Shown: piece by piece, positions 2,351-35,656 of the stretch
How positions within the stretch are numbered: position 1 is the first letter of the stretch
Layout: each line of letters begins with the position of its first letter
From: Laetmonice hystrix
Taxonomy: Eukaryota
Length of the DNA: 64,000 bases
Assembly (NCBI GenBank): GCA_965235115.1
Contig: OZ249453.1
Span: forward strand, 2,232,001-2,296,000
Direction: 5' to 3'
Notes under the pieces: model-generated
The model's database searches: none
What the model was told of the DNA's origin: nothing
Seen by the model: the letters and a program-made list of their open reading frames with translations, nothing else
Program-made: the position numbers and the translations under genes

Positions 2351-2371
2351 CCTTGTGTGCCGGGACATCGT
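2351..2371 (-). CDS. Probable 21-nt microexon of the claudin-like gene
   Basis: Acceptor attatcatttttgtctttcaag|, exon ACGATGTCCCGGCACACAAGG, donor |GTAAGA. Phase 1-1 and in frame after exon 2: (D)DVPAHK. Confidence 0.5.
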
Positions 2372-2984
2372 CTTGAAAGACAAAAATGATAATAGCAGGA
2401 CGAATTATCAACGGAAAGAAGCTACTGAAAATATCACCAAAATTTAACCGATGTAAAACTAGCCTTACGGCCCACGCACACGTATGTGCGATTTTTTTTT
2501 ATAATACGGAAACTAACAGAGAAGTTTGCATTAATTCAAGCAAACATAAGTTAAAATGAGCAAGTGATAAAATTCACGCCTATATTTGCTCGGATTGGCC
2601 GACTGGAAAAGGGGCGTGTCCCAGAGAAACAACTTTAGGAATTATTGAAACTCATAAAGTAATACTTAAAGAGGAGAAATAATTTGAATTGATTTGAGTT
2701 TCCAGCTCGGCCATTCCTGTGGCAACAAAATCCCATCGGAACATTTAAATATTTGCTAATTAAACAAAATGCTCGCGTTCCAAGTATGTTTTTCTCATCC
2801 GGGAATGGCTTGAGAAAAGTCCCTCGTAAGAATAGTTCTTTGTCTGAGCGCATTCAAAACAAAACTTGGGGTGCGTTCAGTAACAGTGGCGTCACAAAAC
2901 GTTGGGTCGTTTAGCCGTTCAAGATTCGTAACGATGCCAGCGTTTTGAGATTGACTTGTTACCTGCGGCTGTTTGCTAGCCTAC

Positions 2985-3077
2985 CTTTGCCGTTGAGTCG
3001 TGAGCAGTTGTTCCCGTGGGGACTGGAAGTACACTCGAACCACAGGCCCGAGTGTATAGCACCATGGTGGACAGTCG
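2985..3077 (-). CDS. Coding exon 2 of the claudin-like gene (extracellular loop 1 signature)
   Basis: Acceptor gttgcattgtatgtttcag| and donor AAAG|GTAGGC. The 93-nt exon is phase 1-1 and reads (A)TVHHGAIHSGLWFECTSSPHGNNCSRLNGK. Joined to exon 1 it gives W-x14-GLW-x2-C-x8-C, close to the claudin/PMP22 ECL1 signature. Confidence 0.85.
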
Positions 3078-4833
3078 CTGAAACATACAATGCAACATTT
3101 TCCTGTTAAATCTTTAAAATTTTAATTATATATTTGTCTTTGTGAGAAATGCCAAGTTTACGATATGATTCCCCTCACCGTTTTAGATTTTTCTTTTTAT
3201 AAGGAATTAAAGCCTTCCACGTGAGCCGCTAGGTGGCGATCGGGGTATTACTAAATTGGTATCACCCAGCATGCTCCGTCGCCACAGGCGTTGATCACTC
3301 ACGCCCCCTAGTGGCTTCCATTAGTACTACAGGCAGGGGTGGGGATGAAGAGATGTGGCGGCCAGGGATGGGGTCACGGGTCAACGGGTCAACGGGTTAC
3401 GGGGTCCGAGTGAGGGTTAGGGGTAATATTGATCGACAGTCTGCTGCCTGCCTTCCTCTCGTTCNNNNNNNNNNNNNNNNNNNNNNNNNNNNNNNNNNNN
3501 NNNNNNNNNNNNNNNNNNNNNNNNNNNNNNNNNNNNNNNNNNNNNNNNNNNNNNNNNNNNNNNNNNNNNNNNNNNNNNNNNNNNNNNNNNNNNNNNNNNN
3601 NNNNNNNNNNNNNNNNNNNNNNNNNNNNNNNNNNNNNNNNNNNNNNNNNNNNNNNNNNNNNNNNNNNNNNNNNNNNNNNNNNNNNNNNNNNNNNNNNNNN
3701 NNNNNNNNNNNNNNNNNNNNNNNNNNNNNNNNNNNNNNNNNNNNNNNNNNNNNNNNNNNNNNNNNNNNNNNNNNNNNNNNNNNNNNNNNNNNNNNNNNNN
3801 NNNNNNNNNNNNNNNNNNNNNNNNNNNNNNNNNNNNNNNNNNNNNNNNNNNNNNNNNNNNNNNNNNNNNNNNNNNNNNNNNNNNNNNNNNNNNNNNNNNN
3901 NNNNNNNNNNNNAGACTGCAGGGCAAAGCGGCCAAACACTCAGTTTTGCCACTGAACAGTTACAGATCTTGACGCCCATGTACTGAATTAAACATCTATG
4001 TTTAAAGACGCCGGAGCTGTATCGATGTTTTTCATAAAAATATGAATTTAGGAATGTCTTACTTTAGATAACATACATCTATAGGCCTACATGGAAGCAA
4101 TCTCTGAGAGTATTGTGCACGTCCTTCCAAGATTTCGACCTGTGAGGGCCTTATAACCGTTTGATTAAGGCGTCCTGTCAGAAAGTCCAATCACCTTAAA
4201 TCATAGAGCTCCAAGCCATGTCCACTTCCAGTAACAGCAACTCTCTGAGCACTGACAGAGAATTCAATGGGTCATAGTTGATTGAATTCGATTCCTTTTA
4301 TTAAACGACCAATTTCGTGAGATTGGATGGCGAATACGTCTGTCTAAAATCGATGCTATAGCAACTATAGCTCAACGTGGGGATGTACGATTGGTAAGAT
4401 GTAAACACATGGCTGAGACATTGAAAAATGTCAAATTTTCACCCAAGTTAATTGCAAACGCCCTAAGTAGAAGGCGTCTACCTCATGTGGTTGTTAAAAA
4501 AATCAATAGATTTTTACGGTGATCAACGAACGCTTACGCACAGAAAGCCATACATCATCTGCGCATGCTCAATAAATCATATGATAATTAAAATCTGAAG
4601 GGGATNNNNNNNNNNNNNNNNNNNNNNNNNNNNNNNNNNNNNNNNNNNNNNNNNNNNNNNNNNNNNNNNNNNNNNNNNNNNNNNNNNNNNNNNNNNNNNN
4701 NNNNNNNNNNNNNNNNNNNNNNNNNNNNNNNNNNNNNNNNNNNNNNNNNNNNNNNNNNNNNNNNNNNNNNNNNNNNNNNNNNNNNNNNNNNNNNNNNNNN
4801 NNNNNNNNNNNNNNNNNNNNNNNNNNNNNNNNN

Positions 4834-4899
4834 AGTGAGAGAGACAGACAGACAAAGGCAGACAGACAGAAAGAAAGAGATACAGAGAGAAAGAAAGAG

Positions 4900-4956
<57 letters not shown>

Positions 4957-4980
4957 GCAGAGACAGAGACAGAGACAGAT
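4834..4980. repeat. (GA)n/(GACA)n microsatellite next to an assembly gap
   Basis: Directly visible. Confidence 0.95.
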
Positions 4981-7946
4981 GCTGTATTAAAAGGACACAA
5001 TAATAATATTATTATCTTTTGTTTCTCGAAGAGTATCATGGTCGCCGCTTGTTTTAAAAAGCACGACCGGAAACGAATTCAAATATTACACCATGTGATG
5101 GTCATAATTAACATCTTACAATGGCAGTGGCTTGTGTAAATTAACACAACAGGGTCTGGGCGGCAACTTCTCAGCCTTTGTCATGTAATTAGTCTGAGGC
5201 TGCTGTCTCGGTGGTCGCCGATTGTTCCCATGGCACCCCCTGGGGACCAAACGCCCGCCTTAGTTACACGATATGACTTCACTACTGTCGCCCAAAGCTA
5301 CAAATTCCTAGTACCACAGAAATTTCTTTTCACCGGTTAGATTCCGCTTCGTGGCTTGCTGATTCTTCCCGGGTCAGAAACGAAAACGGGAGCTACGAAT
5401 CGAAAACTGAATCGAAAAATGTGTACATTTGGGCCACAGTACTACATTGTACGCCTAATACAGCCGCCAGAACACCAGCAACCCCTGGGTCTGTGAGAAT
5501 CCCAAACAAAACCCTCTGGTTCACCACCAGCTGGTGTTCATTCAAAATATTGATCATTTAGAGATCTGAGGCAGTGAGATGATGGTAGTGAATAAATGCT
5601 TTCCACGCCTCAGGACCACAATCAGACTTCTGTATTCCCTCCAACCTTGAAGGCTTTGTGTCCTTGAACAAAACCTCGGAAATCGACCTCGGAAAATCGA
5701 CCTCGGAAATTACAGCCCTCAGAAATGGTTGTTATAGAAGCCTTACTGGAAAAGAAGCCACTAATTTTGGGCTGAAAACCATCAGCGTGCATAGAAATGA
5801 TGCATGGTATTCTACCGCGCTATAAAATATCATTTGGCATTATACGATACGTAATAAAGTGTTCCAGGTTGTTACAAACTGTAGCTATATGAGGATCTAG
5901 CCATGATGTAAACTGAGTTATAATTATGAGGGTTCGAGCCATGATGTACACTGAGCTATATGAGGGCCGGGGCATGACGTTAGCTACAGTAACACCAGGC
6001 CAGGGTCACGACGCTGAACTGAACTTTATTTTGTTTGATAAGAGTGATTGATCTCATTGAATTCAAGTAAAAGGTCAGAGGAGTTTCCCCTCCACGGACC
6101 GCCACACATCGAATAGGATCTGTCCAGTATTTTACATTTCAACGTTCAAACGTGTCATGCTATAACAAACTAGGATCGGCTGTTTCTGCTACTTGACCTA
6201 ATGGTATAGCCATTCATAATATTACCAGCATCACTACATACAACCTGTGGCCAGACCGGCCGACTATATCTCGGTCACGGCGACGCTAGCGTCTGCGTGT
6301 GTAGCACACGGCGTCTCTGGGACCGACGCTGACTTGCCGTCCGTTGTACCTCACGCACACACCTCACGCACACGTCCGGTACGTCAAAGATTCAAACATC
6401 TCTTCGAAGTGACATTGGGCTCCATTTGGTAACCCTAGCTACAGAGCGACCCGTGTTTCCTCCCATTGATATCAAACGGGGCTTTCCGTTTGGTTAGCAC
6501 GGACGCGGGCCAACGTTTCACAAACATCTGTGAGGGCATTTCAATGAGCCAAAAGATGCAATGGTGGCGCTGACGAAAAGATTTCTTTTCTGGAGACGTG
6601 GTGTTTCAAAAATCAATTCGCTGAAAGCATTCATTTAACACCTAACCAAAGACGCCGTTTTAAAGACACCATTTTAGAGAAGTCGTTTCTAAAGACGTCG
6701 TTTCTAAAGACGCTGTTTCTAAAGACGTCGTTTCTAAAGACGCCGTTATTTACTGAGACGCACCCTATTGATTCACTAGTTCGGTCAGGTCATGTGACGT
6801 TACAAATAATTATCAGTAATCAGTTGTAGGCTACTGATATGTAGGCCTAGAACTCTGTCTGTCTCTCTNNNNNNNNNNNNNNNNNNNNNNNNNNNNNNNN
6901 NNNNNNNNNNNNNNNNNNNNNNNNNNNNNNNNNNNNNNNNNNNNNNNNNNNNNNNNNNNNNNNNNNNNNNNNNNNNNNNNNNNNNNNNNNNNNNNNNNNN
7001 NNCAGCAGATCCCTAATTCTATCCAGCATTGATTACGTTCTGAAAAACGTAATATTTTTTTACTCGTCAGGTTTCATGTTTGTTCCTTCCATGAACAAGT
7101 CCACCACCAGGCGGCGCTGTAACAATCCCCTCTGACTAATCCCATAGATGCCCTTTATGTCGACTGTCAGATTACGGATGTAGGGAACTTTAAGGTCAGG
7201 TACTGGCGTTCACACTCATCATCAATTAGATCAACTACTACTGTAGTGTTCAATGAACCGTGCCACTCTGTTCAATCAGATGTGTTCACGCAGTCTGAAC
7301 ATCATTACAGGCGTCAATCGATTTCAGTTTAAAATGAAGCCGTGAACACTAGGAGTGAGAATGTTACGGATTCAATGAAGCGGCTGTCTTCTCCCTCTGG
7401 TTGCTTTCTGTCTCCGTGTCTTCACATTCGATGCTCAGCTGTGCGACGTCTGAGCGACCCCCACCACCTCTACTCCCGACATGATTCTGATTCTCGTAAA
7501 AATCGATTTCCTAAATCGGCAATTACGCAAATAAACGCCAATTCATGAAAATGACTATCAATCACAACAATGGCTCTGAATTATGTCTCAGTAATCAGCA
7601 TGATCGACTCAACATTGAAATAATAACAGAGCAGATTGATTAGCCTAGCAGTTAATTAGCACCTCTATCACCAGGTTCTTTCACTGTGAATTAACAAGCG
7701 TCTATAGACATAACCGACATTGTGTGTGAGATTAATTGGCCTGCTACGTGGGAACGCAATCCTTGCTGCGTTATAACCAACCGTTTTATTGGCAATCCTT
7801 GCTGCATTATAACCAACCGTTTTATTGCTATAGACCCGGAGCCTGTCACAACACAAAGTGTGTTTACCAATAAATCCCAGGCTTATAGTTCATCTTAATA
7901 CTACATTGTAGAGTATTCATACAGGCCTAGCCTACAGGTACAAATG

Positions 7947-8257
7947 CAGTGGGGGATGCAGGATTTTGATAAGGGGTGCCCACCTAAAAGTTTTGCCCCG
8001 CTACGTTCGGCATGGTTTTATTGTGATTATTGCCATTTTGGGCCCCTTTTGGTCTATTTCAATGCTACATGGTCCAGACTTATGTTTCTCCTGGATGACT
8101 GAGGAGGTCCTTTTGGGCCCGATGTTACGATCACGTACAATATAGGAGGCTTTCTTAAAGAATTTTGTTGGAATCCGAATAATGCATCTTTTTAAAAAAA
8201 GAGAGAGAAGGAAAATTTAGGGGGGGGGGGCCCTTGGGCCCCCTGGATCCCCCTGTG
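7947..8257. mobile_element. Non-autonomous TIR element (CAGTGGGGGATGCAGG...CCTGGATCCCCCTGTG)
   Basis: Imperfect 16-bp terminal inverted repeats; AAATG directly flanks both ends (7942-7946 and 8258-8262), a candidate 5-bp TSD. Confidence 0.6.
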
Positions 8258-8427
8258 AAATGCATTGTTGTCATCAAATTATAAGAAAGTCGGTGAGTGT
8301 AATGAGTGTCTATATTATGACAGCTGTGAACCCCATTAAGGTGGAAGTTTCTTACTTCAGGGTGTTGAGACTAAACCAATCTGACGCCATTAGGCGCCGA
8401 TGGCGTCACCTTCTTCAATGATCAACA

Positions 8428-8691
8428 GTACAACGACAACTGACACTTGGTGCAGATGGAGACAGCTGCCACTCGGTACAGATGGAGACAATTGACAATC
8501 GGTGCAGATGTAGACAACTGACACTCGGTGCAGATGGAGACCATTGACAATGTACAGATGGAGACAACTGACACTCGGTACAGATGGAGACCATTGACAA
8601 TGTACAGATGGAGACAACTGACACTCGGTGCAGATGGAGACAATTGACAATGTACAGATGGAGACAGCTGGCACTCGGTACAGATGGAGAC
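8428..8691. repeat. Composite minisatellite of 23-27-bp subunits
   Basis: Recurrent cagatggagaca...tgacactcggt / ttgacaatgt units. Confidence 0.85.
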
Positions 8692-8864
8692 GAGCCCTGC
8701 TATAACAGCGCCATGACCAGGTCACGTACAGCCTGGTAGAGTGTGTCCCCCCCCCCCCCCCCCCCCGAGAGGTCCCAAATATTTTGGGGTTGGTAAGTTG
8801 GGGGTCATGGTGTTAGAGGGGGTGTTGGTGTTTCATTATGATCAGATGACAGACCTGTGTGATT

Positions 8865-9160
8865 GAATTCAATCTCTGCTGATTTGGAGGTCTGGCGAAA
8901 TATGCCACGACCAGACGGTGCTGAGTGACCTATATTAGGCCTAATATGACGAGGACCTCGCATAGCAACGAGAAAAACAGGAAGTAATTTAGGTCCTCAT
9001 GGCTTCTACTGATGACGGTCACCATGATGATCCCTACTCAATATTATCTGTTTCGTGGGTTTCTACCTAAATTACACGAGGCCATTGTCATATAGGTCAT
9101 TCAGCACCGTCTGGTCGTGGCATATTTCGCCACACCTCAAAATCAACAGAAATTGAATTC
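8865..9160. mobile_element. MITE-like element with about 70-bp imperfect terminal inverted repeats
   Basis: 8865-8935 (gaattcaatctctgctgatttggaggtctggcgaaatatgccacgaccagacggtgctgagtgacctatat) is the near reverse complement of 9090-9160. Confidence 0.7.
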
Positions 9161-9344
9161 CGTGTGTCGGAGGTCCTGGACGAGAACTGCATGCAAAGAT
9201 ACACACTTGTGTTGAATAAGACAGAGTAAAATAATCAGTTTCAATCTTATATAGGTTTCAGACAAACTGCTGACGCCACCTTTCGGTAAGGTGTCAGAAC
9301 GGAACCTCATATGAGTAGGGTAACTCACTACAGACCGTTTTTAT

Positions 9345-9382
<38 letters not shown>

Positions 9383-11667
9383 GAATATCCTTGATTTCTA
9401 TTGGTTTTCCAAAAGGATTCGTGGATGTCACTTATCATGATATTTCACATCGTCATCAGTGGAAGCCATGCCACTGGGCCGAAATTTCTGCCATTTCTCC
9501 TATGATTGAGTCAGTGAACACCCACGGGAGCCACTTGGGATGAAATAATGATATATCGGGGACGGTAATACCTCTATGGTGGGACCTTGGAACATAAGAA
9601 ACACATCACGTTCACTAGGCCCACCCTCTGCGGGTAACGGATGCCTGAGCCGGACCTGCCTGACAGACGTGGCTTCATTGACAGTACAATGGAGGACGCG
9701 TGGCCAAGTAACCGACCGCATGATTGGAAAATAGGAGGCAATAAGGAACCGGGACCGTATCATTGCAGGGGCATTGTGGGAAGGTGATTGTCAGGGGAAC
9801 TGGTGATATTCTTGAGGGCAAGGTATTAGAAGAAGACCGTTTATCTCACTAGCTGAGATCAAACTTGAGGCCTTTTATGACGTTGACAACGATTAGATAA
9901 AACTATTACAAGTAGCGAGATCCCAGCAACGCCTTCCATAAAACAAGACTTTTTACGTCATAGTTACATTGTAAACAACTTTTATTCCCCACTGCCGTCG
10001 GGTAGAAACCGGTTGGACTTGTCCTGAGTTTAATCAATTCACCGTCTGGTCTTGTGCAGGTCTTAACTGACTGGTTTAAACTGACAACAGAACTGTTGTC
10101 AGTTTAGATCCAGGTCTAAACTGACAAATAATGATCACCAGTGCTGGAATAATAAATCGCTAATTTGAGGTTTCTAGGTCACAATGCCGCGCTCGTCCAA
10201 TCAGCGCCGATGATCGTTTTCTATCACGGTCACCGTGTAACCTAGATAGGCGTTTGTGTCCATACCCTTTTTTCAAGCGACGAGCGGCCTTTGGCGAGAA
10301 AAAGGGCCTGGTGATCGAGGCTAGCTCACAGTAGGCCTATAATTGTGTCCTCCTGTGATGACCAGGTCACAGTCAGTAGGCATACATCAGACCTACCCCA
10401 TGGCGCCTATAAACTAGCGTCACGCACATGTACAGGATGCCAGTGATGTTGACACGCACCTGTAAGTACATGTAGAGCATGATCACGATACTCCGGGCAG
10501 TAACGGAGGGAGGAAGTCTTTAGGGAATACACTGTATCTGAACGAATGTTTGCCACTGCCCCTGTTTAATTAGAAAGCGAGGGGTCACCCAGAGGTGGCA
10601 TGTCATTACCTTGATTGTACCTGAGGATTCTCACCCCTCAGGTGCAATGTAAGACGCGCCCCTCCATGTCAAGATACTGTTGCGTGAGTCCACACAGAAG
10701 TGCAACACAAGAATGTCTAACAGCCCTTGCTGTTTTAAAAATTGGATTCGAACCAGTTCCGGTTGGCGGAAGCCCTTCCAGTGGCCAGTGTTATAGGCCT
10801 GATGTAACGGAGCGAGCATTCCGTTTTAATTGTCAGGCTGAATCGGTTGATACTGGTGCTGACACACAGCACACCCAGCAGAAGTGCATGACTACTGTGG
10901 CGCAAAGGTACAATTCTTCGCGGAACACAAATTATTTTTAACACCTGGAAGATTTCGCTTTGCAATTAAATTTCGTATCTTGGTCGAACGGTGCCACTTC
11001 GGAGCAGAACCACACAATTTGAAGCGAAATCTGACGGATAAAAAGAAATTTATGTGCGACCGACTTTTTGTACTCTTGGGCCATAGTAGCATACCAGCCT
11101 AGTGTGTTTTCAATTAGATCCAATACAGTTCTACCGGCACAGAGTACCATTGTCCACATGACAATACCCGACGCACCAACCTACAATCATATTCAATAGC
11201 GTCTCATTTTCAAACACACACCATTTGCGTGTTATTATTTTATTTAAATTCACGTGCTGCAGAGCCCCCCCCCCACACCCCCCCCACACCCCACCCACAC
11301 CCCTCCAGTGTAAGTGTAAGAAATCTAAGGTCTAATTATGAGGCGTTTGAAAACCACCGGAAAAAACAGCCCAGCAATGAAATCAGCATTTACGAGTGCA
11401 TCAATACAAAGCCATTGTACATAGGTCTAATTATTTATAAGAATCAATTCAGGTATAGATCTGCGGGACTACAATGAAAACAGGTCAACTGAGACTATTG
11501 TGTTCCTTCAGATAAATATGACGTTTAAATGGAGCGCATAAATCACGAAAATGTGCAGTAAGTATTGAATAAAGTATATGACCACCCACAACAAACCGGG
11601 TCGTCGTTTTCAATTCAATCGATAATATCCTTATATATTGCCTGCAAATTTCGCAAGGAAAATGTGC

Positions 11668-12024
11668 GCTTACACAGACCATTAGAAACAGTGCGCTTAC
11701 ACAGCCCACTGGAAACGGTGAGCTTACATAGCCCATTGGAAACAGTGCGCTTACACAGCCCACTGGAAACGGTGAGCTTACATAGCCCATTGGAAACAGT
11801 GCGCTTACACAGCCCACTGGAAACGGTGCGCTTACACAGCCCACTGGAAACAGTACCCACTGGAAACAGAGCGCTTACACAGCCCACTGGAAACAGTACC
11901 CACTGGAAACAGTGCGCTTACACAGCCCACTGGAAACAGTGCGCTGACACAGCCCACTGGAAACAGTGCGCTTACACAGCCCACTGGAAACAGTGCGCTT
12001 ACACAGCCCACTGGAAACAGTGCA
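11668..12024. repeat. 27-bp minisatellite, about 12 copies
   Basis: Unit acagtgcgcttacacagcccactggaa. Confidence 0.9.
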
Positions 12025-25375: not shown

Positions 25376-25603
25376 TCACGAATTTGGCCAAATTAGCGTT
25401 ATGTGTGGTCAGCAGGAAACATTACAAAAACTACTCATCTTCATCTGATTTGATCTTCAATTTCTTCTAATTTGATCTTCATCATCATTCATATAAGATT
25501 GTTAATAGGAATTACTTCCCTTGCCAATGTGACAAAGCAGATGATGTACTTTTGTGAAATTTTCTGCTGACCACACGTAACGCAAATTTGGCCAAATTCG
25601 TGA
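25376..25603. mobile_element. MITE-like element with about 65-bp imperfect terminal inverted repeats
   Basis: tcacgaatttggccaaattagcgttatgtgtggtcagcagg... on the left pairs with ...tctgctgaccacacgtaacgcaaatttggccaaattcgtga on the right. Confidence 0.65.
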
Positions 25604-27825
25604 GACACGACCTTCTATTCATTTTTGACTTATTAGCAGAGAATAGGTAGATACAGAAGTTTCACTGTCATTGAGCTCTATTGTGACGTCATTATTCACA
25701 AGTTGGCCTGGTAGATTATACAACAGTTGCTGTTGGTGCAGTTCAACAGGATAAAAATGGTTAGCAAACTACGAGATAATCGTTTCAATAAATTCATTTG
25801 TAACTCTCGACCTGAAGTGAGCCCAGCTGGGCCCAACAAGAATGGATGCAATTAGATTTCACTCCTTATAACTAATTAAATGTATTAAATGTTACCTTGC
25901 TAAAGGTAAAAAGGTAGCATGAAACACATACCAGCACCTGCCTTTAATGGTACTTTCACATGTATAGCATATATTCAACTATATAACATGCGGCTCAGAT
26001 GAGGACGTAACACCATGACTAGGCCCATGAAATGCTCTCTAGGTTTATCTCAACCTTTCACGTTTCCACAGCGTTCCTGCCTGTCCACAATGTTCCGCGC
26101 CGCTAGGCTGGACTTGAGAGAATTACGGTACCTGATCTTTTTCACACGAACGCTCATATCGAATGCCATGGTCTGTCTTAACAAAGTGTTGCTGTGAAAT
26201 ATCAAGACACTGCCACGCATTTAGTTATAAAATATTTATAGTCTACTACTTGTCTTCATTGATAATTCTATTTTTTTATAATATAAAAACCATAATATTA
26301 TAACGTTGTTAAAATGTGATATGAATAATGATTTAATTTGGATATTCCACGTCCATAGCTCCTGTAACGTCTGTAATATCTTAGCTGAGCTCTGGAGACT
26401 TTGCTCCCCGTTCTACTCAGAGAGATAGGCCTACGTACGGGGTCCAGAGTATCTCCCTTACACGCCTTTCATTCCGACTCTGTGGAGATGAATTAATTAA
26501 TCAATGCAGTGATACCTAAAGCCGGAAGCGGAAGCTAACGGTAATGTAATTATTGTTGGTCGATTTACCGTTTAATTCAAATGACGGGATGACGCTTAAT
26601 CTAACCAGAGCGGTTTAAAGATTATTATCACGACCGACTGACGATTGTTATCGACCGAACTGAGTCCTGAGCTTCATGACAGAGTGATATGACCTGCTAC
26701 CATTTGAGATCATAAATGTCTCTACGATATGCGAGTAATCGATAGCGTTAAGCGAAGTCTAGCGATGGTACTGACAGTCAAGGTGTTAGAGCCTACAGTC
26801 CCGTCACCGGATCACATCAAGACCTGCACCGCCGATTGTATTAGTGGATGGCTATGGGTTGATGACTGCCAAACCGTGTTGAGGGATTCAATTTCAGATG
26901 AAGATGTATACAGTGCTTACCAATGGTTACCAATGGTTACCAATGGTTACCAATCATTTATGCTTACCAATGGTTACCAATGATCAACCATGCATCCCAT
27001 AATGGCAGGCGTAGTTTCCTCATCTAGGGCATATAAACAGTGCATGATTCTAGATTATGATGTACTGAAATTACACTATTAGATTCTTTGTTCTTTACGG
27101 TGAACTCAAACAAGGGTTCAACAAATTTGAAGGAGTCGAACCAAAATAACTTCAAAGTTTGGTATGGTTTCGGCTCTATAACCGTTCTGAAATTTAATAT
27201 CGTTAACAGATGTCAGTTCACAAACGTCCTGAGCAGAATCTAATTAGATAGAAGGAGATTTTGTTTGGTTCTTTCATCAGGGCCACTAAGTGGATTTTTC
27301 AGGGGATAGCGGTTTGGTCCCCTGTGGATCCGTTCCGACCGGGTCATCCATATCAAAATAATTCTTTATATAAGAAACTCTAAAACGCCACTTGAAAGTG
27401 AAACGCCACTTTATGCGATCATCCTTTCCCAGACCCACTGACATCACAATGTAATTTTGTGTTCCCTCGCCGGACAATTTGCTGGATCCGCCACTGGTTG
27501 TTTCGGAGAACGATACGCCATCCTCTGGGTTCAGCAGGATGTCTTCACATGTTCATGTACATACTTCCTTTACTTCACTGTCACCCCCCCCCCCCCCCAA
27601 CACCCCCCCCCTCCCCCTTACCCTCCCCTCCCCCCTCCCCGACCCGGGAGTACGCTTGCTGCAGCAGGTCCAATGGAGACCCGACGGCCTTATTCATCAG
27701 TCTGAACATGCGCAGTGGGTCACGCTTGACGACCTTCACCTGTCACCCGCGGCCTGATTGGCTGGACCCCAAACGAGGCTGGACGGAGGTGAGCCGAGAA
27801 CTGTCTGCCCTTGTCCATTCTGGCA

Positions 27826-28002
27826 ACCTTCGGCGGGTTGTCTTCGGTAATGTTCGGCGGATTCTCTTCGGTAATGTTCGGCGGATTCTCTTCGGTAATG
27901 TTCAGTAGGTTCTCTTCGGTAATGTTCGGTAGGTTCTCTTCGGTAATATTCGGTAGGTTCTCTTCGGTAATGTTCGGTAGGTTCTCTTCGGTAATGTTCA
28001 GC
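27826..28002. repeat. 24-bp minisatellite, about 7 copies
   Basis: Unit ttctcttcggtaatgttcggtagg. Confidence 0.9.
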
Positions 28003-29133
28003 GGATTGATAAACGTATACGTCTCTGGTACATAACGCGGCATTCACTGAACAGGAGGAAACGAAGCGGCGCGGATCCTGCAGGCAGTAAACAGTCTCTA
28101 ATATAGTCCACTACAGATTTTTTAATATGCGTTAATGAATTCCTATATTACATCGAATTTTAATTATGGTTCTGATGTACAGGATCTACTGTAGATTATG
28201 ATGATGTTCAGGTACTGAAATTGCATTACGTAATACGCTCTATTACGTTGGAATCCATCTGGCAACCTTCGACAGGTGCCAGTCGGCATTTTCTATCACC
28301 GGAAGTCCCGGCATTCCCTATAACAGGAAGTAGTGCTATCCCAGAGAAACACTGCACCAGAGGTGATTTCTTGGCCGCTTGGGGGCCAGAGTGGTCCTTG
28401 TCAATATGTATTCTGTGTTGTTATTGGTCCATTCTTTACCGCGTGATCACGATAAAATCTTCGAATCGTATTCCGTTCTTTCCGGTTTCAGGTCTGAGGT
28501 AATACAGATGTAACAACGCAAATATAGCCATTTATATGGTGCACCGCGAAACCTTTTTTACACTTATATTAATATGAGCACTCCTAGTGCAGACTGCCCT
28601 ATACCGCCCTATAGGACTAACCGGCCATGGACGAGACACGAGGTGTAGTAATTTGATTAGAATACCTGAAGATCAAAGCTCCGACCAGTGGGTCTGCCAT
28701 GGAGGGCTAAGGTCAATGGGTACATGTCCTGGAGGTCAGCACGTCAATGTGTGGAGAGGACTGTACTGGGAGTGTGTGATGTAGATCCCATAGATTAATA
28801 AATCTACATCTTTATTGAAGAGATGTAATCGTATGTCCCACTGGACGTCCGCCTCCATACGTAATGTAAGAAACTCTAAGAGACATACAGATCTCTCCAT
28901 CGTTCTTTTACTGTTAGATTTCACCCATGATGAGTTCCAATCATATTAACCTATAATCTAAGTTATGTACAATCATTAGCCCTGGCTGTATACGTATTAA
29001 AGCTGGCTTAACCACGCATAGGGGCCGCCATAATATCGCTCATACATATTTAATTCCTCGTATCAAATTCTATGTAGATCTAAAGTCCGTCCTACATAAC
29101 GCGGGCAGCCAAGGTTAGTTTGGGTCCACCTAA

Positions 29134-29443
29134 TGTGTGTTATATTGTAGTGTGTGTTATATTGTAGTGTGTTATATTGTAGTGTGTGTTATATTGTAGT
29201 GTGTGTTATATTGTAGTGTGTGTTATATTGTAGGGTGTGTTATATTGTAGGGTGTGTTATATTGTAGTGTGTTATATTGTAATTTGTGTTATATTGTAGT
29301 AGTGTGTGTTATATTGCAGTGTGTTATATTGTAGTAGTGTGTGTTATATAGTAGTAGTGTGTGTTATATTGTAGTGTGTTATATTGTAGTAGTGTGTGTT
29401 ATATTGTAGTAGTGTGTTATATTGTAGTGTGTGTTATATTGTA
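29134..29443. repeat. 13-18-bp degenerate minisatellite
   Basis: Unit gtgtgttatattgta(gta). Confidence 0.9.
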
Positions 29444-30301
29444 GCCACAAACTGGTTGTTCATACGGAAGCCACATGGGGGTTAGCTAGCCTTGAGATGT
29501 CTGCTTGCTCCCCACGGCTGTCAGTCTATGGTGGCACACTGTATGCACTCAGTAGAAGCACTGATGCCCAGGACCTGCGGCGTGCACACAGAGTGTGTCG
29601 GTGTGGACGCCATTACAGGAATTATCATTGGGTTTTTTACATTGTAACGGGTAGGATACCTATACACACCCGTATTAAATCTTCCTGCACAAATAACTGG
29701 ACTTGAATCTCGATGTGTTAGACACACAAAACACAAATCTATCTGGGGCATGAATTTACGGCATACATGGTCGTTACTATCATGTAGGACATGTAGAAAA
29801 TGTAGTTTACTCCCACGCTTGGGTTTTGGTGGAGTTTGAGTCAAATATTTGCGTATATGAGCTGTATCTCAGTCTTGCGGCCGAGATCTTGCGGCTAGTC
29901 AGTTTAGGCAGAAAATTTGGAATCAAGTTCTATGAAAACAAAAAGGAAGTGATTATTGACCCGGCAACCGGCTGCAGTATCGAGAATTTGCGGTTGTTTA
30001 CCCGGCAGCCGGCTCCCCAGTGAAGAAACCCGAACGTTCATTGTTGTGTACCCGGCATTGCCGGGCATGGAAGGCTTAATTTTTTCACTGAGACCCCGGC
30101 TGGCCCGGTCCCGGGCCTGAAACACGCGTTGACTTTCTTTCCCTCTAGTCTAGGCCCATACTTTTAGCCTTTTAAGTTTGGTTTAAGTTTAGGTTAGGTA
30201 TAGGCGCCTACCCGTGAAGCTATGGTAAAAGCTAGGGTCGGGGGCATGCCCCCCAGAAATATTTGAAATCGGATGTTGAAAATGGGCCAGGGGTTTAATC
30301 C

Positions 30302-30835
30302 AGCATACCTCATGAAAACCACCAGGAAAAACGGTATCTAGTACACTCGCATACCTCATGAAAACCGCCAGGAAAAACGGTATCTAGTACACTCGCATAC
30401 CTCATGAAAACAGCCAGGAAAAACGGTATCTAGTACACTCGCATACATCATGAACCCTCCAGGAAAAACGGTATCTAGTACACTGTCATACCTCATGAAA
30501 ACCGCCAGGAAAAACGGTATCTAGTACGTCAGTGTATATCAATGTACCAGTACGTCAGTGTATATCAATGTACCAGTACGTCAGTGTATATCAATGTACC
30601 AGTACGTCAGTGTATATCAATGTACCAGTCGTCAGTGTATATCATTGTACCACTACGTCAGTGTATATCAATGTACCAGTACGTCAGTGTATATCAATGT
30701 ACCAGTACGTCAGTGTATATCAATGTACCAGTACGTCAGTGTATATCAATGTACCAGTACGTCAGTGTATATCAATGTACTAGTACGTCAGTGTATATCA
30801 ATGTACCAGTACATCAGTGTATATCAATGTACTAT
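30302..30835. repeat. Abutting 46-bp (about 5 copies) and 26-bp (about 12 copies) arrays
   Basis: Units gcatacctcatgaaaaccgccaggaaaaacggtatctagtacactc and gtacgtcagtgtatatcaatgtacca. Confidence 0.9.
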
Positions 30836-33111
30836 CAGGTTTAATCGTTACTGAATACATACCTATATAACTATGGAATGATAACGACAACAATATCCCG
30901 GATATCTTGTGTTAATTTATAAAATATCCGATATATTTGTCTTAACCTCTGGTTGACCCAACCACTGTGCCCATACACGGGCCCTATATTCACGTCTATC
31001 GCGTCCTCATGGCTTCATGTTGGTTGGACAAAGGATTCAACTTCCAGAAGAGTGAATCAATGAATGGTCGTGAATAACCGGAGTATTGAATGAAAACGAG
31101 GCTGTGCTGACAATAGGACATATGGTGACGTTTAACAAGAAATGGCGGCCCAGTACACTTGTGTATGATGAGGTGAACTAACGCCTGGGGCTTCGATTCC
31201 ATGCTAGGGGTATGGTAGGCAGTCATCATGAAATACAGGATTCATAATATAGGGGTATAGTCAAACCATTATATTATACATTATACCATAAAGGTATATT
31301 TATACCATAATGGTGTATTCATACCATAGTGGCATACTCATTTTAAACCCGTTTATATCGCCCATGCTTGTCGTACTTGTTAGTCTATATTGCATGTCGG
31401 AGGGATAGTTCTATTCTGCATGCCCTGCTAGGCTCGAGGCGGGGTCGAGATCTTATTCAGGGCATGCAGCAAGGGAGACTGACAAACGAAAGCAATATCT
31501 ACATTAGTACACTGCTGGGAGTACAGATCGCATTAGGCCCTTATAAAACTCCATTATCGGGGCATAATATACCTTTTAGCAGGACCAAAGTGTGATAATG
31601 TAGGATATAATAACTAAGCCGTTGTGCAGATGGTACTCCAGAATCTCCCGCAGGTAGGAACTGTTTACGTCACCCCAGGGTAAAGTATCTCTGCGCCCTT
31701 GTATGTATAGCGGCAGGTGTGCTATACACCCACATTTATTGATTAGAACTGACATACCCTAACATCAAGGAACACGGGCCAACCAGCTAAAGGCATCAGC
31801 CAACACAGGGCACACGATGTGTGTGGTAACTACTGCTGAGGGGGTCGCATTCTACATGGAGAGATAAATACATTAAGGTTACTGGCAGACTCCGCATCGA
31901 CGGGCAATAATATNNNNNNNNNNNNNNNNNNNNNNNNNNNNNNNNNNNNNNNNNNNNNNNNNNNNNNNNNNNNNNNNNNNNNNNNNNNNNNNNNNNNNNN
32001 NNNNNNNNNNNNNNNNNNNNNNNNNNNNNNNNNNNNNNNNNNNNNNNNNNNNNNNNNNNNNNNNNNNNNNNNNNNNNNNNNNNNNNNNNNNNNNNNNNNN
32101 NNNNNNNNNNNNNNNNNNNNNNNNNNNNNNNNNNNNNNNNNNNNNNNNNNNNNNNNNNNNNNNNNNNNNNNNNNNNNNNNNNNNNNNNNNNNNNNNNNNN
32201 NNNNNNNNNNNNNNNNNNNNNNNNNNNNNNNNNNNNNNNNNNNNNNNNNNNNNNNNNNNNNNNNNNNNNNNNNNNNNNNNNNNNNNNNNNNNNNNNNNNN
32301 NNNNNNNNNNNNNNNNNNNNNNNNNNNNNNNNNNNNNNNNNNNNNNNNNNNNNNNNNACATTATTAGAGTTTAGTTAAACATCAGTGCAGAAATTTATCA
32401 CAGGTGATATTATTACCCTTCCAACACTTCAGCATTAGTTGTAAACCAATGTAAACCAATCAACCCCTCTTCTGGTTTATACCGAGAGTTCTCAAACTAA
32501 ATATATAACAGGGCATCAATAATAATGTCAGTACTGGTCGAGGAGCATTGATCGTCAACAGTTTGCTACATTGGGTTTAAATCCCCCCGACCTATATACC
32601 CACCTTTACATATTTTACTTCATGCCATCACTGTGGTCGAGAATCTGTACAAACTGCTTCAATTTGTTTGTTATTTGGTATAATGTAACTTCAGCAGGAA
32701 ACCTTTCGGTAAATCAAGTTTACAATCCTGAAAAGTGAGCATGCAACCTGAAATATACACGAACAATCGCGTGCACGACATAATGTTGACATTTCCATCC
32801 CAGTATGAGCCAGAGGTAAAATTGATCGAGAACGAACAGAACATCTATTGTCTGCCTCAGTATTCCAGTCCACTGAATGCCAGAGACAAGGCGAGAGGTT
32901 AAAATCATTAGGTTGGTCCGTGCAATTTCCAGGGCTCATATTGAACGGTGAGTTCATTAATAGAACATGGCCTGTGCGTGTATACGATGTTTGTAACGGG
33001 TACCTGGGGCAGAAAGTGGCAAGGTGGGGTACGGGGGGTAACGGGGAGGGGGTGAGAGAAACGGGGGCAGGGTAGAGAGGGTAAAAGTAAAGGGGGTTCA
33101 AGTCCACCTAC

Positions 33112-35656
33112 CTTGTTGTCGAAACCAATCGTGGTTGGTAATACTAATGATGGTAAGAAGTAAAGCAATCAGGCTGAGTAAGGTTCCCACGTATCGACAT
33201 CGAGTGAACATTGAATGATCCCAGAACGCCACCAGATTGTTCCACTGGGACACCGTCAATTTTACCTCCTCTTTGGCTGATTTCTTCCTCCTCCGGGAGA
33301 TCACGGGTACGGTCACCGTGCTGACGACCACAGGTTTTTGGTCACTTGGTCTGTCGTTGTTATCTCCGAACGGAGTGTCATCAAAACCGAACTGGTCCTC
33401 GCATAAAACATGTTGCGATTCCAACTCGGCGGATACAAACATCACTGATTCTTTCCTCGCCTTACGGACTGGAGTGCTGACTCGAGTTTTTTCCATCTCC
33501 TTTTGCCGCTGTTCGAGATTGTCGAGTCGTTTTTTGAAAGAGTTGCGTCTGTCTTGTGACCAGGTAAGCCAGGTGGAGTTGGTGTGAACGCCAAGGAAAC
33601 GCCCTGACCCACTCCGGCTGAGGGTGGGCGTGTCAGTCGGAGTGTATGACCCCCGGCGCACGTCCGATCCACGCCTACCAACGTCGATGACAATTTCAGG
33701 GTTGGGCCCCCTCCCCCCTCCCCCACCCCCTACCTGGGTGGCTGGCATACCTGGCCGACCCACCTCATGGCCGTCAGTGCGAGCCTGGCCGTACAGAGTC
33801 AAGTCCAGTCCATGCTCGATCGCCGCCGATGTTAACTTGCGATCTCGGCTCATGGTTTTGTCGGCCGACTGGACCCGACGGCCTGACGTCGAGGGGGGTC
33901 CGGCCGGTCCGGTGTTGCTGCTCGGCCGGCGCCGTGTTGGGGTGGTAGTCGTACCTGGGGTTGTGATGACTCGACTGGTGCTAGCGTTCGTAGTGGTAGG
34001 TGTAGTGATGAAGCTAACATACGTATGATGGCGACTGCTACCGTTACCTTCTCCTCCTCCTCCTCCCCCTCCTCCTCCTCCTCCTCCTCCTCTGCCGCCG
34101 CCCCCGCGCTGTTGTTGAGCCCCAGCAGGGTGTTGGTTGTTGTTGTTGTTGTTGCTAGTCTGGAGGATAGCAGCAGCTGGTCGACTTGTTGACTGATGTT
34201 CCTGCTGATGTTCCGTACCACCGCTGATGGCGCCACCAGCACCGCTGGATCCAGCCGTTGCACCACCCCCACCACTGACACCACCACCACCGCCCGGTGG
34301 AGAGTCTTTCACGCTGACGTCGCTCCTCCTGCGGGCGGCCACTCGGCGCGCTGCATGCCGGGATGGTCGACCGTCCGATACAAGCGTCGGGTCGTGGAGC
34401 GCCGAGGGTGGGGTACCTGTAACCTCTCGGTCAGGACCTGTGGGCGAGCGGCGGTGGTGGTGGTGCGGGTGGTGGCGATGATCAGGGTGTTGTTGGCGGT
34501 GGCGATGATGATGATGATGATAATGATGATGCCGGGATGACGGGTCAGTAGTACCTGAGGCGGCCGCCAGGTTGCCATCTGACATATGATGTCTACGGCG
34601 TGGGAGCGGGTCGTCCGTTCGGCGCCTCGCACCTGTGGCGGAGGTGGTGGTGCTAGCGGTGCTACCTGCGGTTCCGGGGCCACCACCACCACCGGCCCCA
34701 CCGGCACCACCGGCACCACCGGCCCCAGAGCCAGCAGTACTCGAGTCACGGCGGCCAGGGTTATAGTGCCGCCGTGAGTGATGACGTGAGCCGTGGTGGT
34801 CCTCTCTGTCATGACCCCCCGGACCGTGGGGATTCCCGACACTGTCAGCAGCACTGCCCGGCCGGGAGGCGTCGTGGGAGGTCGACCCATGCCGGGATCC
34901 CGGGTTGTGGGGGTTTAGGGGATCCCCCCACTGACCACGTGGGTTTGAGGGATCCCCCCACTGACCACGTGGGTTTGATGTACCCGCCCATTGACCACGT
35001 GGGTTTGGTGTGTCCCCCCACTGACCACGTAGATTTGGTGGGTCCGCCCACTGACCACGTGGGTTCGGGGTTTCCCCCCACTGACCACGTGGGTTCGGGG
35101 TTTCCCCCCACTGACCACGTGTTTGAGAGAGATTCCTTTCACTAGAGTAGCGCTCGTCAGGGCGAGACCGTTCAAGAGACGGACTCCGTGCCCCCCGCCT
35201 CGGGTTTCCAGGGTTATCCCCGTGTCCCCTTCCCCTTGGGTTGGGGTTGGGGTTTGGATTGGGGTTGGGGTTGGGGTTATTACCACCTGGGTTGTGCCCG
35301 AGAGGTAGCCGCATGCCCCTGGACCCTCGAGGGTTGTTGGGGCTGACGTGAGGGTTGTCAATGGGTGAGGGGTCGTACGCCCCTGTCGGGGAGGGAACTG
35401 TGTCTCCATATCCACTCGTCTCGGTCGAGCTGAGCGTATGAATCCGCTGTAAACTGTCCCCGAGTCCCGACGTCTCCGCCGAGCTGTGAGCGTGGATCTT
35501 CTGAAGGCTGTCCAGTCGATCTAACTTATCTCCGTAATCATGTAACGGGATGGATTCCCTGGGACTGGGTTTCCTGGGGAACATGTCCCGACCCTTACCG
35601 TGGACAATAATCCCACCTATACCATCGTCCGTGGGACTTTCATTGCCATAGTCCAT
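33112..35656 (-). CDS. Coding exon 1 of a claudin/PMP22-superfamily-like membrane protein: about 820 aa low-complexity N-terminus + TM1 + start of extracellular loop 1
   Basis: 858-codon open frame. The ORF finder start at 35674 is GTG; the first ATG is at 35656 in a strong Kozak context (CGCGCCATGG). The frame ends in the hydrophobic helix YVGTLLSLIALLLTIISI (33193-33140), then TNHDWFRQQ, then a phase-1 donor CAAG|GTAGGT (GT at 33111-33110). It joins in frame to the exon at 3077. Confidence 0.8.
34911..35122 (-). repeat. Coding 30-bp repeat, 7 copies (decapeptide RGQW[GA]xxxNP)
   Basis: The (c/t)tgaccacg core recurs at 34931, 34961, 34991, 35021, 35051, 35081 and 35111, inside coding exon 1 of the claudin-like gene. 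Confidence 0.9.

What the first reader, a model, noticed from the sequence alone, without database searches (positions are those of the whole stretch)
2351..35656. Claudin/PMP22-like gene with an ~820-aa disordered N-terminus encoded by one 2.5-kb exon, spliced across a 30-kb intron
Seen: the 858-codon ORF ends in a TM helix and a phase-1 donor. About 30 kb away, a 93-nt phase-1 exon with consensus splice sites continues the frame as HSGLWFECTSSPHGNNC, completing W-x14-GLW-x2-C-x8-C. The ORF track cannot see this join. Known: classical claudins and PMP22/EMP proteins have N-terminal cytoplasmic tails of only a few residues. Inference: this is an atypical claudin-superfamily architecture, a tetraspan module fused to a large G/H/R/S/T/P-rich intrinsically disordered region that could act as a scaffold or condensate-forming tail at junctions or cilia. 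TM2-4 are outside the window, so the tetraspan call is incomplete.
Basis: partly seen in the sequence, partly recalled or inferred. Interest (0 to 1): 0.8.

Follow-up and report, generated by a model that had tools for sequence, protein, structure and literature searches.

The report
Two-isoform claudin-like junction gene
The spliced gene is real: a claudin/PMP22-type four-helix membrane protein with an 820-residue, mostly disordered tail, belonging to an uncharacterised family shared by annelids, molluscs, brachiopods and nemerteans, and the same gene also carries a second, short-tailed start cassette.

Summary

**Long form.** The 858-codon minus-strand ORF (ATG at 35656) ends in a TM helix and an AAG|GTAGGT phase-1 donor at 33112. 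The 93-nt exon at 3077..2985 continues the frame and gives W-x14-GLW-x2-C-x8-C. All assembly gaps lie in intron 1, not in exons. Left of the window I found two more phase-1 exons that supply TM2-TM4 and a stop. Together they give a 1002-aa product.

**Family.** The last 215 residues align end to end with full-length relatives at 40-58% identity. Those relatives come from Owenia, Lingula, Tubulanus, Littorina and Dreissena, plus transcript-like contigs. They score above Pfam's PMP22_Claudin cut-off. All named ones are labelled uncharacterised or carry only an automatic name. The nearest known clade is TMEM47/VAB-9.

**New here.** Between exon 2 and the shared exons lies a second 5' cassette with its own ATG, TM1 exon and loop-1 exon. 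It predicts a 214-aa short-tailed isoform. The same exon order is present in Lingula and Paralvinella.

**N-terminus.** It is low-complexity but carries three conserved elements.

**Limits.** No RNA data exist for this species. Function is inferred.

The parts
33112..35656 (-). Exon A, the first coding exon of the long isoform (2545 nt). It runs from ATG 35656 to donor AAG|GTAGGT after 33112 and encodes aa 1-848: an N-terminal tail of ~821 aa plus TM1 and the first W of extracellular loop 1.
   Evidence: Start Met aligns with that of the 78-80% identical relative P0001. 12 synonymous: 6 non-synonymous variants in DNA contigs.
35371..35505 (-). Conserved N-terminal short linear motif, duplicated in tandem (aa ~51-95). 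Each copy has the pattern L-Q-K/R-I-H-x-x-S-S-A/T-E-T-S-G-L/Y-G-D.
   Evidence: Present in most long-form family members listed: in the annelid-like rows mostly in two copies, and as one copy in molluscs, the brachiopod and the nemertean. tblastn with Owenia P0059 36-56 hits 35461..35399 at 76% identity.
34911..35121 (-). Coding 30-nt minisatellite of 7 copies, encoding repeats of N-P-R-G-Q-W-G-D/E-T-P inside the variable low-complexity region.
33431..33607 (-). Conserved juxtamembrane element (aa ~684-742): a predicted ~29-residue alpha-helix (S-T-W-L-x-W-S-x-D-R-R-x-S-F-K-K-R-L...) followed by the invariant stretch R-V-S-T-P-V-R-K-A-R-K-E-S-V-M-F.
   Evidence: Alignment A1 has 25 invariant columns. 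AF2 helix at residues 12-40 of the segment, pLDDT 79-90. The profile finds 100 proteins, 48 of them at E<1e-30.
33113..33262 (-). Conserved pre-TM1 element (W-N-x-L-x-x-F-W-D/E-H) plus TM1 of the long isoform.
   Evidence: Hit by profile A2 at G000:C30:2265113-2265262, E 1.5e-8.
3078..33111 (-). Intron 1, 30,034 nt as assembled. It contains all five assembly gaps (1,488 N in total).
   Evidence: No further family exon was found in it by tblastn with nine relatives or by profile.
2985..3077 (-). Exon B (93 nt, phase 1-1): the loop-1 exon of the long isoform, carrying H-S-G-L-W-F-E-C...C.
1..2984 (-). Start of intron 2; the gene continues left of the window. In G000:C30 coordinates: exon A' 2225337..2225148 (own ATG, TM1', phase-1 donor GAG|GTAAGC); exon B' 2218836..2218753 (84 nt, G-V-W-D-T-C...C); shared exon C 2217653..2217504 (150 nt, TM2 and start of TM3); shared exon D 2216839..2216619 (rest of TM3, loop 2, TM4, tail ending S-R-V, stop TGA).

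Best explanation
This is one ~51-kb minus-strand gene of the PMP22/EMP/MP20/claudin superfamily. It belongs to a conserved, uncharacterised spiralian subfamily whose nearest characterised relatives are TMEM47/VAB-9. It has two alternative 5' cassettes, each with a TM1 exon and a loop-1 exon, in the order A, B, A', B'. All boundaries are phase 1. Both cassettes feed two shared exons, C and D, which encode TM2-TM4 and a tail ending in a Cys pair and S-R-V.

The A+B+C+D form gives a 1002-aa protein. Its ~821-aa cytoplasmic N-terminus is mostly hypervariable, low-complexity and probably disordered. That tail tethers three conserved elements to the membrane module: an N-terminal S/T-rich motif duplicated in tandem, a basic juxtamembrane helix with R-R-x-S and S-T-P sites, and a pre-TM1 W-N-x-L-x-x-F-W-E-H box. 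The A'+B'+C+D form gives a 214-aa conventional tetraspan with a ~37-aa N-tail and a different, N-glycosylatable loop 1.

Shown: exon structure, reading frame, family membership of relatives, conservation of both cassettes across phyla, and purifying selection on exon A.

Inferred: use of two promoters in this species. Also inferred is a junctional role like VAB-9/TMEM47, with the C-terminal S-x-V acting as a PDZ ligand and the membrane-proximal Cys residues as palmitoylation sites. In this reading the long tail is a regulated docking region for kinases or other partners, and the alternative TM1/loop-1 changes extracellular or lateral partner specificity, as in claudin-18 and claudin-10 isoforms.
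For: **Structure.** ORF, donor and acceptor are as described. Exons C and D were found left of the window with consensus sites. The spliced CDS is 3009 nt with a single terminal stop.

**Homology.** tblastn with relatives hits A, C and D at E 1e-7 to 1e-25. The spliced C-terminal 215 aa align over residues ~1-204 with P0041, P0076, Littorina P0060 and Owenia P0059 at 48-58% identity, E 1e-54 to 1e-72 (MSA).

**Family.** Relatives score 33.8-57.7 bits on PF00822, cut-off 26.7. The profile against PDB finds LIM2/MP20 at 4.6e-9, then TARP gamma-2/3 and claudin-15/19. The AF2 model of the short relative has four helices plus loop-1 strands, and its top seven Swiss-Prot fold hits are all TMEM47. 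ESM features point to a mollusc PMP22 cluster, arthropod TMEM47 and nematode VAB-9.

**Second cassette.** A' and B' have splice sites and the same intron position and phase as A and B. The short product matches the transcript-like P0110 (221 aa on a 1,219-bp contig) and Paralvinella P0109. The order A, B, A', B', C, D is the same in Lingula. In Paralvinella, A lies ~60 kb upstream of A', B', C, D on the same strand; B was not located. C and D are unique in the genome. Cassettes group by type, not by species, with 98/95 support.

**Coding.** Exon A shows 12 synonymous against 6 non-synonymous variants (expected synonymous fraction 0.25, p=2e-4), and the only coding indel is 9 nt.

**Disorder.** The N-terminal 690 aa have normalised hydropathy 0.361 against a boundary of 0.425.

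[quoted passage not shown] CLDN10 has a and b variants with opposite charge selectivity (PMC9184838).
Against: - No RNA run exists for this organism, so none of the junctions (33112->3077, 2985->exon C, A'->B'->C) is seen directly. Promoter use is also unobserved.
- Pfam run on the single exons of the window's own product gave nothing above cut-off. The only hit was Clc-like at 14 bits for exon C.
- The spliced protein itself could not be submitted because it has no reference.
- The Lingula RefSeq model includes both B and B' in one protein, so the two loop exons may not be strictly exclusive.
- The TMEM47 link rests on 22-24% identity and TM-scores of 0.39-0.48 from a model with mean pLDDT 71. 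No phylogeny with TMEM47/VAB-9 sequences was possible.
- VAB-9 is reported to lack a PDZ ligand (PMC3879130), whereas this family mostly ends in S/T-x-V.
- Some 'variants' between 34782 and 34920 may come from repeat copies rather than alleles.
Confidence: 0.8

Rival explanations
1. There are two separate genes. One is a single-exon gene encoding only the 858-aa ORF, reading through into the intron to its stop at 33098. The other is an independent short tetraspan gene, A'-B'-C-D. On this view exon B is a relic or chance match.
For: Every ORF-style prediction in databases, and the Paralvinella annotation, end at this exon boundary and split the locus into two models. No RNA is available here.
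Against: Exon A ends in a conserved TM1 with the family's W, and the intron sits at exactly the same codon and phase as in A'. Exon B has consensus sites, matching phase and the conserved H-S-G-L-W...C...C. Contigs of 2-4 kb from relatives (P0041, P0111, P0076) and gene models carry the N-terminal domain and the whole tetraspan in one protein. A lone N-terminal tail ending in one TM helix plus four intron-encoded residues has no conserved end.
Confidence: 0.05
2. The long isoform contains both loop exons (A-B-B'-C-D), as in the Lingula RefSeq model. This would give a tetraspan with an enlarged, duplicated first extracellular loop. A' would be a rarely used or dead first exon.
For: B and B' are both phase 1-1, so including both keeps the frame. 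XP_013410926.1 of Lingula is built that way.
Against: The other seven long-form relatives aligned carry a single loop exon of the B type. They include transcript-like contigs and P0041, which groups with Lingula's long cassette in the tree. A' keeps an ATG at the same aligned position, an open frame and 38-48% identity between this genome, Lingula and Paralvinella. A transcript-like contig, P0110, has A'+B' without any A-type N-terminus.
Confidence: 0.1
3. The long ORF is not translated as such. It could be a compositional artefact of GC-rich low-complexity DNA, or a decaying exon, with translation starting near TM1.
For: The region is full of simple repeats, and other frames also hold ORFs of 166-193 aa. 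The only Pfam hit on the ORF is one below cut-off (MAP_Futsch, 16.9 bits).
Against: An 858-codon open frame in 45.6% GC DNA is not expected by chance. Conserved motifs sit at aa ~51-95, far upstream of TM1, across four phyla. The start Met and N-terminal residues match those of P0001. Variants are biased to synonymous changes, including at codons 15, 16, 80, 85, 265, 266 and 417, and the only coding indel is 9 nt long.
Confidence: 0.03

Closest known systems
TMEM47 (TM4SF10/BCMP1) / C. elegans VAB-9 clade of the PMP22/claudin superfamily
   Same: Both are four-TM proteins with a W...GLW...C...C loop 1. TMEM47 takes the top seven Swiss-Prot fold matches for the model of the short relative. Arthropod TMEM47 and nematode VAB-9 clusters are among the three nearest by language-model features. 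PERP comes next, as in the published VAB-9 clade (PMC3879130).
   Different: Identity is only 22-24%. TMEM47 is ~180 aa with a short N-tail, and no long low-complexity isoform or dual cassette is described for it to my knowledge. VAB-9 is reported to lack a PDZ ligand, whereas this family mostly ends in S/T-x-V. Orthology was not tested by phylogeny.
Claudin-18 (18.1/18.2) and claudin-10 (10a/10b) alternative first exons
   Same: One gene has two alternative 5' ends that swap the N-terminus, TM1 and loop 1 while sharing TM2-TM4 (PMC11464258; PMC9184838).
   Different: Here each cassette is split into two exons, and the cassettes are interleaved over ~49 kb. One cassette adds an ~821-aa tail. 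The cassette pair predates the annelid-brachiopod split. Use in vivo is not shown.
Lens fibre membrane intrinsic protein LIM2/MP20, TARP gamma-2/3 and classical claudins (solved structures)
   Same: These are the best sequence-profile matches among solved structures: 9cbv at E 4.6e-9, TARP gamma-2 at 3.8e-6 and claudin-15 at 7.3e-6. The matches cover TM1 to TM4.
   Different: The similarity is distant. None of these has a long N-terminal cytoplasmic region; TARPs are extended at the C-terminus instead.
Database relatives: XP_013410926.1 (Lingula), XP_074655128/9 (Tubulanus), CAH1775399.1 (Owenia), XP_070206529.1 (Littorina, 'trichohyalin-like', 2330 aa), XP_052285350.1 (Dreissena), KAH9519954.1 (Bulinus), LSH36_798g01023 + g01048 (Paralvinella)
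   Same: They share the architecture: N-terminal motif, variable linker, juxtamembrane helix and PMP22_Claudin module.
   Different: All are unnamed or misnamed, and none is characterised. Linker length varies from about 100 to about 1,900 aa. Several models look incomplete or mis-joined: Paralvinella is split in two and skips B', and Lingula includes both B and B'.

Membership tests
PMP22/EMP/MP20/claudin superfamily (Pfam PF00822) | Four transmembrane helices with cytoplasmic N- and C-termini | tested here: met
   Hydrophobic segments lie at aa ~822-841, 884-907, 921-944 and 964-983 of the spliced product. The AF2 model of short relative P0110 shows four long helices.
PMP22/EMP/MP20/claudin superfamily (Pfam PF00822) | Loop-1 signature W-(x)n-G-L-W-x-x-C-(x)8-10-C | tested here: met
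   W844-x14-GLW-x2-C-x8-C across the A|B junction. The short cassette has W-x8-GVW-x2-C-x11-C.
PMP22/EMP/MP20/claudin superfamily (Pfam PF00822) | Score above Pfam's gathering cut-off (26.7 bits) | tested here: inconclusive
   The window's spliced product has no reference and could not be submitted. Its single exons score nothing above cut-off. Relatives that align end to end with it at 40-58% identity score 33.8-57.7 bits.
PMP22/EMP/MP20/claudin superfamily (Pfam PF00822) | Beta-strands in loop 1, joined by a strand from loop 2 (claudin fold) | tested here: met
   AF2 model of relative P0110 has strands 75-81 and 89-94 (loop 1) and 171-174 (loop 2). Loop confidence is only 53-60 pLDDT.
Classical claudins (tight-junction strand formers) | Very short N-terminal tail (a few residues) and a C-terminal Y-V PDZ ligand | tested here: not met
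   The N-tail is ~821 aa in the long form and ~37 aa in the short form. The C-terminus is S-R-V, not Y-V. Classical claudins are only distant hits.
Classical claudins (tight-junction strand formers) | Forms paracellular strands or barrier | not testable with these tools
   Needs expression and freeze-fracture or permeability assays.
TMEM47 / VAB-9 clade | Groups with TMEM47/VAB-9 to the exclusion of other superfamily branches in a phylogeny; reciprocal best match | not tested
   No TMEM47 or VAB-9 sequence was obtainable by reference. The only evidence is fold-search ranking and feature similarity. The word-indexed profile search returned family members only.
TMEM47 / VAB-9 clade | Localises to adherens junctions in a cadherin-dependent way (PMC3879130) | not testable with these tools
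   Needs imaging.
Genes with alternative TM1/loop-1 first exons (CLDN18/CLDN10 type) | Two alternative 5' units, each encoding N-terminus, TM1 and loop 1, spliced to shared downstream exons | tested here: inconclusive
   The genomic layout, phases, uniqueness of C and D, conservation in Lingula and Paralvinella, and separate long- and short-type transcript-like contigs in relatives all fit. No transcript data exist for this species.

The most novel reading that the evidence does not exclude
This is an ancient two-promoter, two-cassette gene that predates the annelid-brachiopod split and is the spiralian counterpart of TMEM47/VAB-9. It switches between a plain junctional tetraspan and a form that hangs a long, fast-evolving disordered tether on the membrane. 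The tether carries two deeply conserved regulatory elements: a tandemly duplicated E-T-S-G-x-G-D/E-S/T motif, which from memory resembles phosphodegron-type motifs, and a basic phosphorylatable juxtamembrane helix. On this reading, junction composition, extracellular specificity (a different TM1 and loop 1) and turnover or signalling would all be set together by promoter choice.
Probability: 0.3. Interest if true: 0.65.

Novelty: new variant of a known kind. Interest (0 to 1): 0.55.

Why it matters
Claudin-superfamily proteins are usually read as compact tetraspans whose regulation sits in the C-terminal tail. This is a phylum-spanning spiralian subfamily in which the N-terminus is the large regulated part. 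One locus encodes both that form and a conventional form through interleaved TM1/loop-1 cassettes.

This has two uses. First, it gives a concrete way to test how invertebrate junction tetraspans couple to cytoplasmic machinery. Second, it flags systematic annotation errors: the long introns (30 kb here, about 45 kb in Lingula and about 60 kb between the two first exons in Paralvinella) make gene finders split or mis-join the gene. It is not a new fold or a new principle. Relatives are already in databases as hypothetical proteins, and alternative first exons are known for claudin-18 and claudin-10.

Tried and rejected
- **Whole-genome exon scan.** The Claudin_2 and PMP22_Claudin HMMs, run exon by exon, found other claudin-like loci but not this one because its exons are too short.
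- **Pfam on pieces.** Pfam on the whole exon-A ORF and on single exons gave only sub-threshold noise: MAP_Futsch 16.9 bits and Clc-like 14 bits.
- **Exon 2 in Paralvinella.** A search of the 10 kb downstream of the Paralvinella N-terminal exon found nothing. That intron is also long: the tetraspan part lies ~60 kb away.
- **Close relative's DNA.** DNA for the closest relative P0001 was not available because the file is too large. One look-up for Owenia failed for lack of a slot.
- **RNA evidence.** Two searches found only three DNA-type contig sets from one sample. Laying them showed continuity across the exon-intron border, so they are DNA, and no joints.
- **Names.** Cluster look-ups gave only 'uncharacterized', 'hypothetical' or 'trichohyalin-like'. 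The word-indexed searches returned no named family.
- **Earlier scan notes.** They held nothing on this gene.
- **Spliced proteins.** I did not submit the spliced 1002-aa or 214-aa proteins to Pfam, folding or database searches, because they have no reference and may not be typed in.
- **Complex prediction.** Not used: no binding claim is made.
- **Rejected readings.** A chance ORF, two independent genes, and a hidden exon in a gap are dealt with under the rivals and the observation check.

Full report
**1. The observation**

The minus strand carries an uninterrupted 858-codon ORF at 33098..35674. It contains no N. The five gaps of the finding all lie between 3465 and 32357.

The first ATG is at 35656. 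The residues that follow it match the start of the closest database relative, P0001, which is 78-80% identical in the conserved part.

The ORF ends with a hydrophobic helix, then N-H-D-W-F-R-Q-Q, then AAG|GTAGGT. The last exon base is 33112 and the phase is 1.

The exon at 3077..2985 is 93 nt long. It follows tgtatgtttcag and precedes gtaggc, and it is phase 1 on both sides. The join reads W-x14-G-L-W-x2-C-x8-C. A relaxed form of this motif occurs four times in 104 kb over six frames, and two of those four are the real loop exons.

The gaps sit 388 nt or more from any splice site. Relatives align across the junction without a missing block, so no coding exon of this isoform is hidden in a gap. 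I did not attempt to fill the gaps. Intron length is approximate.

**2. The rest of the gene**

The window is G000:C30:2232001-2296000. I fetched 40 kb to its left and found two further minus-strand exons with consensus sites, both phase 1:
- Exon C, C30:2217653..2217504, 150 nt, encodes TM2, the short cytoplasmic loop and the start of TM3.
- Exon D, C30:2216839..2216619, encodes the rest of TM3, loop 2, TM4 and a tail with a Cys pair that ends in S-R-V before a stop.

A+B+C+D is 3009 nt, in frame, with one terminal stop, and gives 1002 aa. From ATG to stop the gene spans 51,038 nt.

**3. Is the join real?**

No RNA run exists for this organism. The only holders are three contig sets of one sample. 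They run straight across the exon-intron border, so they are DNA. The evidence is therefore comparative.

- An exhaustive profile search with the juxtamembrane region (alignment A1) found 100 proteins.
- Most stop at the exon-A boundary because they are ORF-type predictions.
- Nine continue by about 140-200 residues past the matched part. Eight of these hit PF00822 PMP22_Claudin, seven of them above the 26.7-bit cut-off at 33.8-57.7 bits.
- The named ones are:

| Species | Phylum | Label in the source |
|---|---|---|
| Lingula anatina | brachiopod | uncharacterized protein |
| Tubulanus polymorphus | nemertean | uncharacterized protein |
| Owenia fusiformis | annelid | unnamed protein product |
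| Littorina saxatilis | mollusc | trichohyalin-like (2330 aa) |
| Dreissena polymorpha | mollusc | uncharacterized protein |

- Further N-terminal-type hits come from Bulinus and Mactra, and a full-length one from Candidula. All are 'uncharacterized', 'hypothetical' or misnamed.
- Several relatives sit on contigs of 1.2-4 kb that hold the whole protein, which is what a spliced transcript looks like.
- The last 215 residues of my spliced product align over nearly their full length with these relatives at 40-58% identity, E 1e-42 to 1e-72. There is no gap at any exon junction.
- tblastn with the relatives finds exons A, C and D independently.

**4. Is exon A really coding?**

- Motifs far upstream of TM1 are conserved across four phyla.
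- In the DNA contigs of the sequenced sample, 18 single-base variants fall in exon A. Twelve are synonymous, against an expected fraction of 0.25 (binomial p = 2e-4).
- The only coding indel is 9 nt long.
- Caveat: the six variants between 34812 and 34890 lie beside or in a repeat and may not be allelic.

**5.

A tblastn hit of the Dreissena protein led to a further TM1 exon between exons B and C.

- Exon A', C30:2225337..2225148, starts with its own ATG (M-R-T-F-V-K-L-K...). It ends N-R-H-W-L-Q-G-R plus one base before GTAAGC. That is the same intron position (four codons and one base after the W) and the same phase as exon A.
- Exon B', C30:2218836..2218753, is 84 nt and phase 1-1. It encodes G-V-W-D-T-C-Y-Y-N-E-T...C, with a glycosylation sequon.
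- A'+B'+C+D is in frame and gives a 214-aa protein.
- That protein matches P0110, a 221-aa protein on a 1,219-bp contig, along its whole length. It also matches Paralvinella P0109.

Exons C and D are unique in the 627-Mb genome. The only TM1-type matches upstream of them are A and A'.

The layout is conserved:
- In Lingula the order is A (10001-11575), B (57107-57205), A' (67261-67455; E 2.6e-12, Met at the same aligned position), B' (from ~79316), C, D.
- In Paralvinella, exon A lies about 60 kb upstream of A', B', C, D on the same strand.

A tree of the cassette peptides separates the four short cassettes from the nine long ones with 98/95 support. Cassettes therefore group by type, not by species, and the pair is older than the annelid-brachiopod split.

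Annotation pipelines handle the locus badly. Paralvinella has two gene models and skips B'. The Lingula RefSeq model strings B and B' together.

**6. The N-terminal tail**

Residues 1-690 are 18% Gly and about 10% each Arg, Ser and Pro. Order-promoting residues make up 0-14% of each 50-residue block over aa 101-600. The region lies on the disordered side of the charge-hydropathy boundary, at 0.361 against 0.425. It contains a 30-nt coding minisatellite, a His tract and Gly runs.

Linker length between relatives ranges from about 100 to about 1,900 residues.

Three elements are conserved:
- **N-terminal motif.** L-x-K/R-I-H-x-x-S-S-A/T-E-T-S-G-L-G-D/E-S/T, mostly in two copies in the annelid-like sequences and in one copy in molluscs, the brachiopod and the nemertean.
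- **Juxtamembrane block.** It has 25 invariant columns. The first part is predicted as a 29-residue helix at pLDDT 79-90. It is followed by R-V-S-T-P-V-R-K-A-R-K-E-S-V-M-F.
- **Pre-TM1 box.** W-N-x-L-x-x-F-W-E-H.

R-R-x-S and S/T-P sites suggest phosphoregulation. The resemblance of E-T-S-G-x-G-D/E-S to phosphodegron-type motifs is my recollection only and is untested.

**7. What it is like**

| Search | Result |
|---|---|
| Profile against solved structures | LIM2/MP20 4.6e-9; TARP gamma-2 3.8e-6; claudin-15 7.3e-6 |
| AF2 model of short relative P0110 | mean pLDDT 71; four helices, loop-1 strands |
| Fold search, Swiss-Prot | TMEM47 in the first seven places (22-24% identity), then PERP, then claudins |
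| Language-model features | mollusc PMP22 cluster, arthropod TMEM47, nematode VAB-9 |

A review describes a separate VAB-9/TMEM47 clade with PERP loosely attached. It places VAB-9 at adherens junctions, dependent on cadherin and working with ZOO-1, and it states that VAB-9 lacks a recognisable PDZ ligand (PMC3879130).

Members of the present family mostly end in S/T-x-V. I could not obtain TMEM47 sequences by reference, so orthology is a lead, not a result.

Swapping N-terminus, TM1 and loop 1 through alternative first exons is known for claudin-18 (PMC11464258). Claudin-10 has a and b splice variants with opposite charge selectivity (PMC9184838).

**8. Verdict**

The gene is a real, conserved, uncharacterised PMP22/claudin-superfamily member with a long, mostly disordered N-terminal tail. 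In addition it has a conserved second cassette for a short isoform.

Structure and family placement are well supported. Isoform use in this species and the junctional-scaffold function are inferred.

It is a new variant of a known kind and of moderate interest. It is not new to databases, but it is unstudied, and it shows an unusual, ancient interleaved-cassette layout.

Noticed in passing
window 35916-36677: A 55-bp tandem repeat of 13.9 copies, 95% matching, starts about 260 bp upstream of the ATG of exon A, in the presumed promoter or 5'-UTR region.
   Followed up: no
window 61076-63829 (+): A 917-aa ORF with endonuclease (Exo_endo_phos_2) and reverse transcriptase (RVT_1) domains: a LINE-type retrotransposon copy with an open frame.
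   Followed up: partly
window 34689 and 33085: The sequenced sample carries an in-frame 9-nt deletion allele in the Gly-rich coding repeat. It also carries a 15-nt deletion 27 nt into intron 1.
   Followed up: partly
G000:C30 about 2192700-2198500 (window -33.5 to -39.3 kb), minus strand: Downstream of the gene's last exon, several ORF fragments with multiple hydrophobic segments look like exons of a multi-pass transporter. By eye they resemble an amino-acid permease, but this was not tested.
   Followed up: no
L008 (Lingula LFEI02000514.1) and L006/L009 (Paralvinella JAODUP010000798.1): Public gene models of the orthologues look mis-built. The Lingula model XP_013410926.1 includes both loop-1 exons and omits the alternative first exon at L008:67261-67455. 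Paralvinella splits the locus into LSH36_798g01023 and g01048 and skips the loop exon at about L009:15040-15140.
   Followed up: yes
L007 (GCA_029980185.1, JARPMW010007967.1) and proteins P0007-P0014: A sub-group of relatives has an extra intron between the juxtamembrane block and the TM1 exon. The TM1 exon was found at L007:4733-4882. Their taxon was not identified.
   Followed up: partly
proteins P0099, P0114-P0120 (~322 aa, metatranscriptome-type contigs): A divergent branch, ~25% identical, has a short N-terminal region but still carries the juxtamembrane block and the PMP22_Claudin module. Its source organisms are unknown.
   Followed up: no
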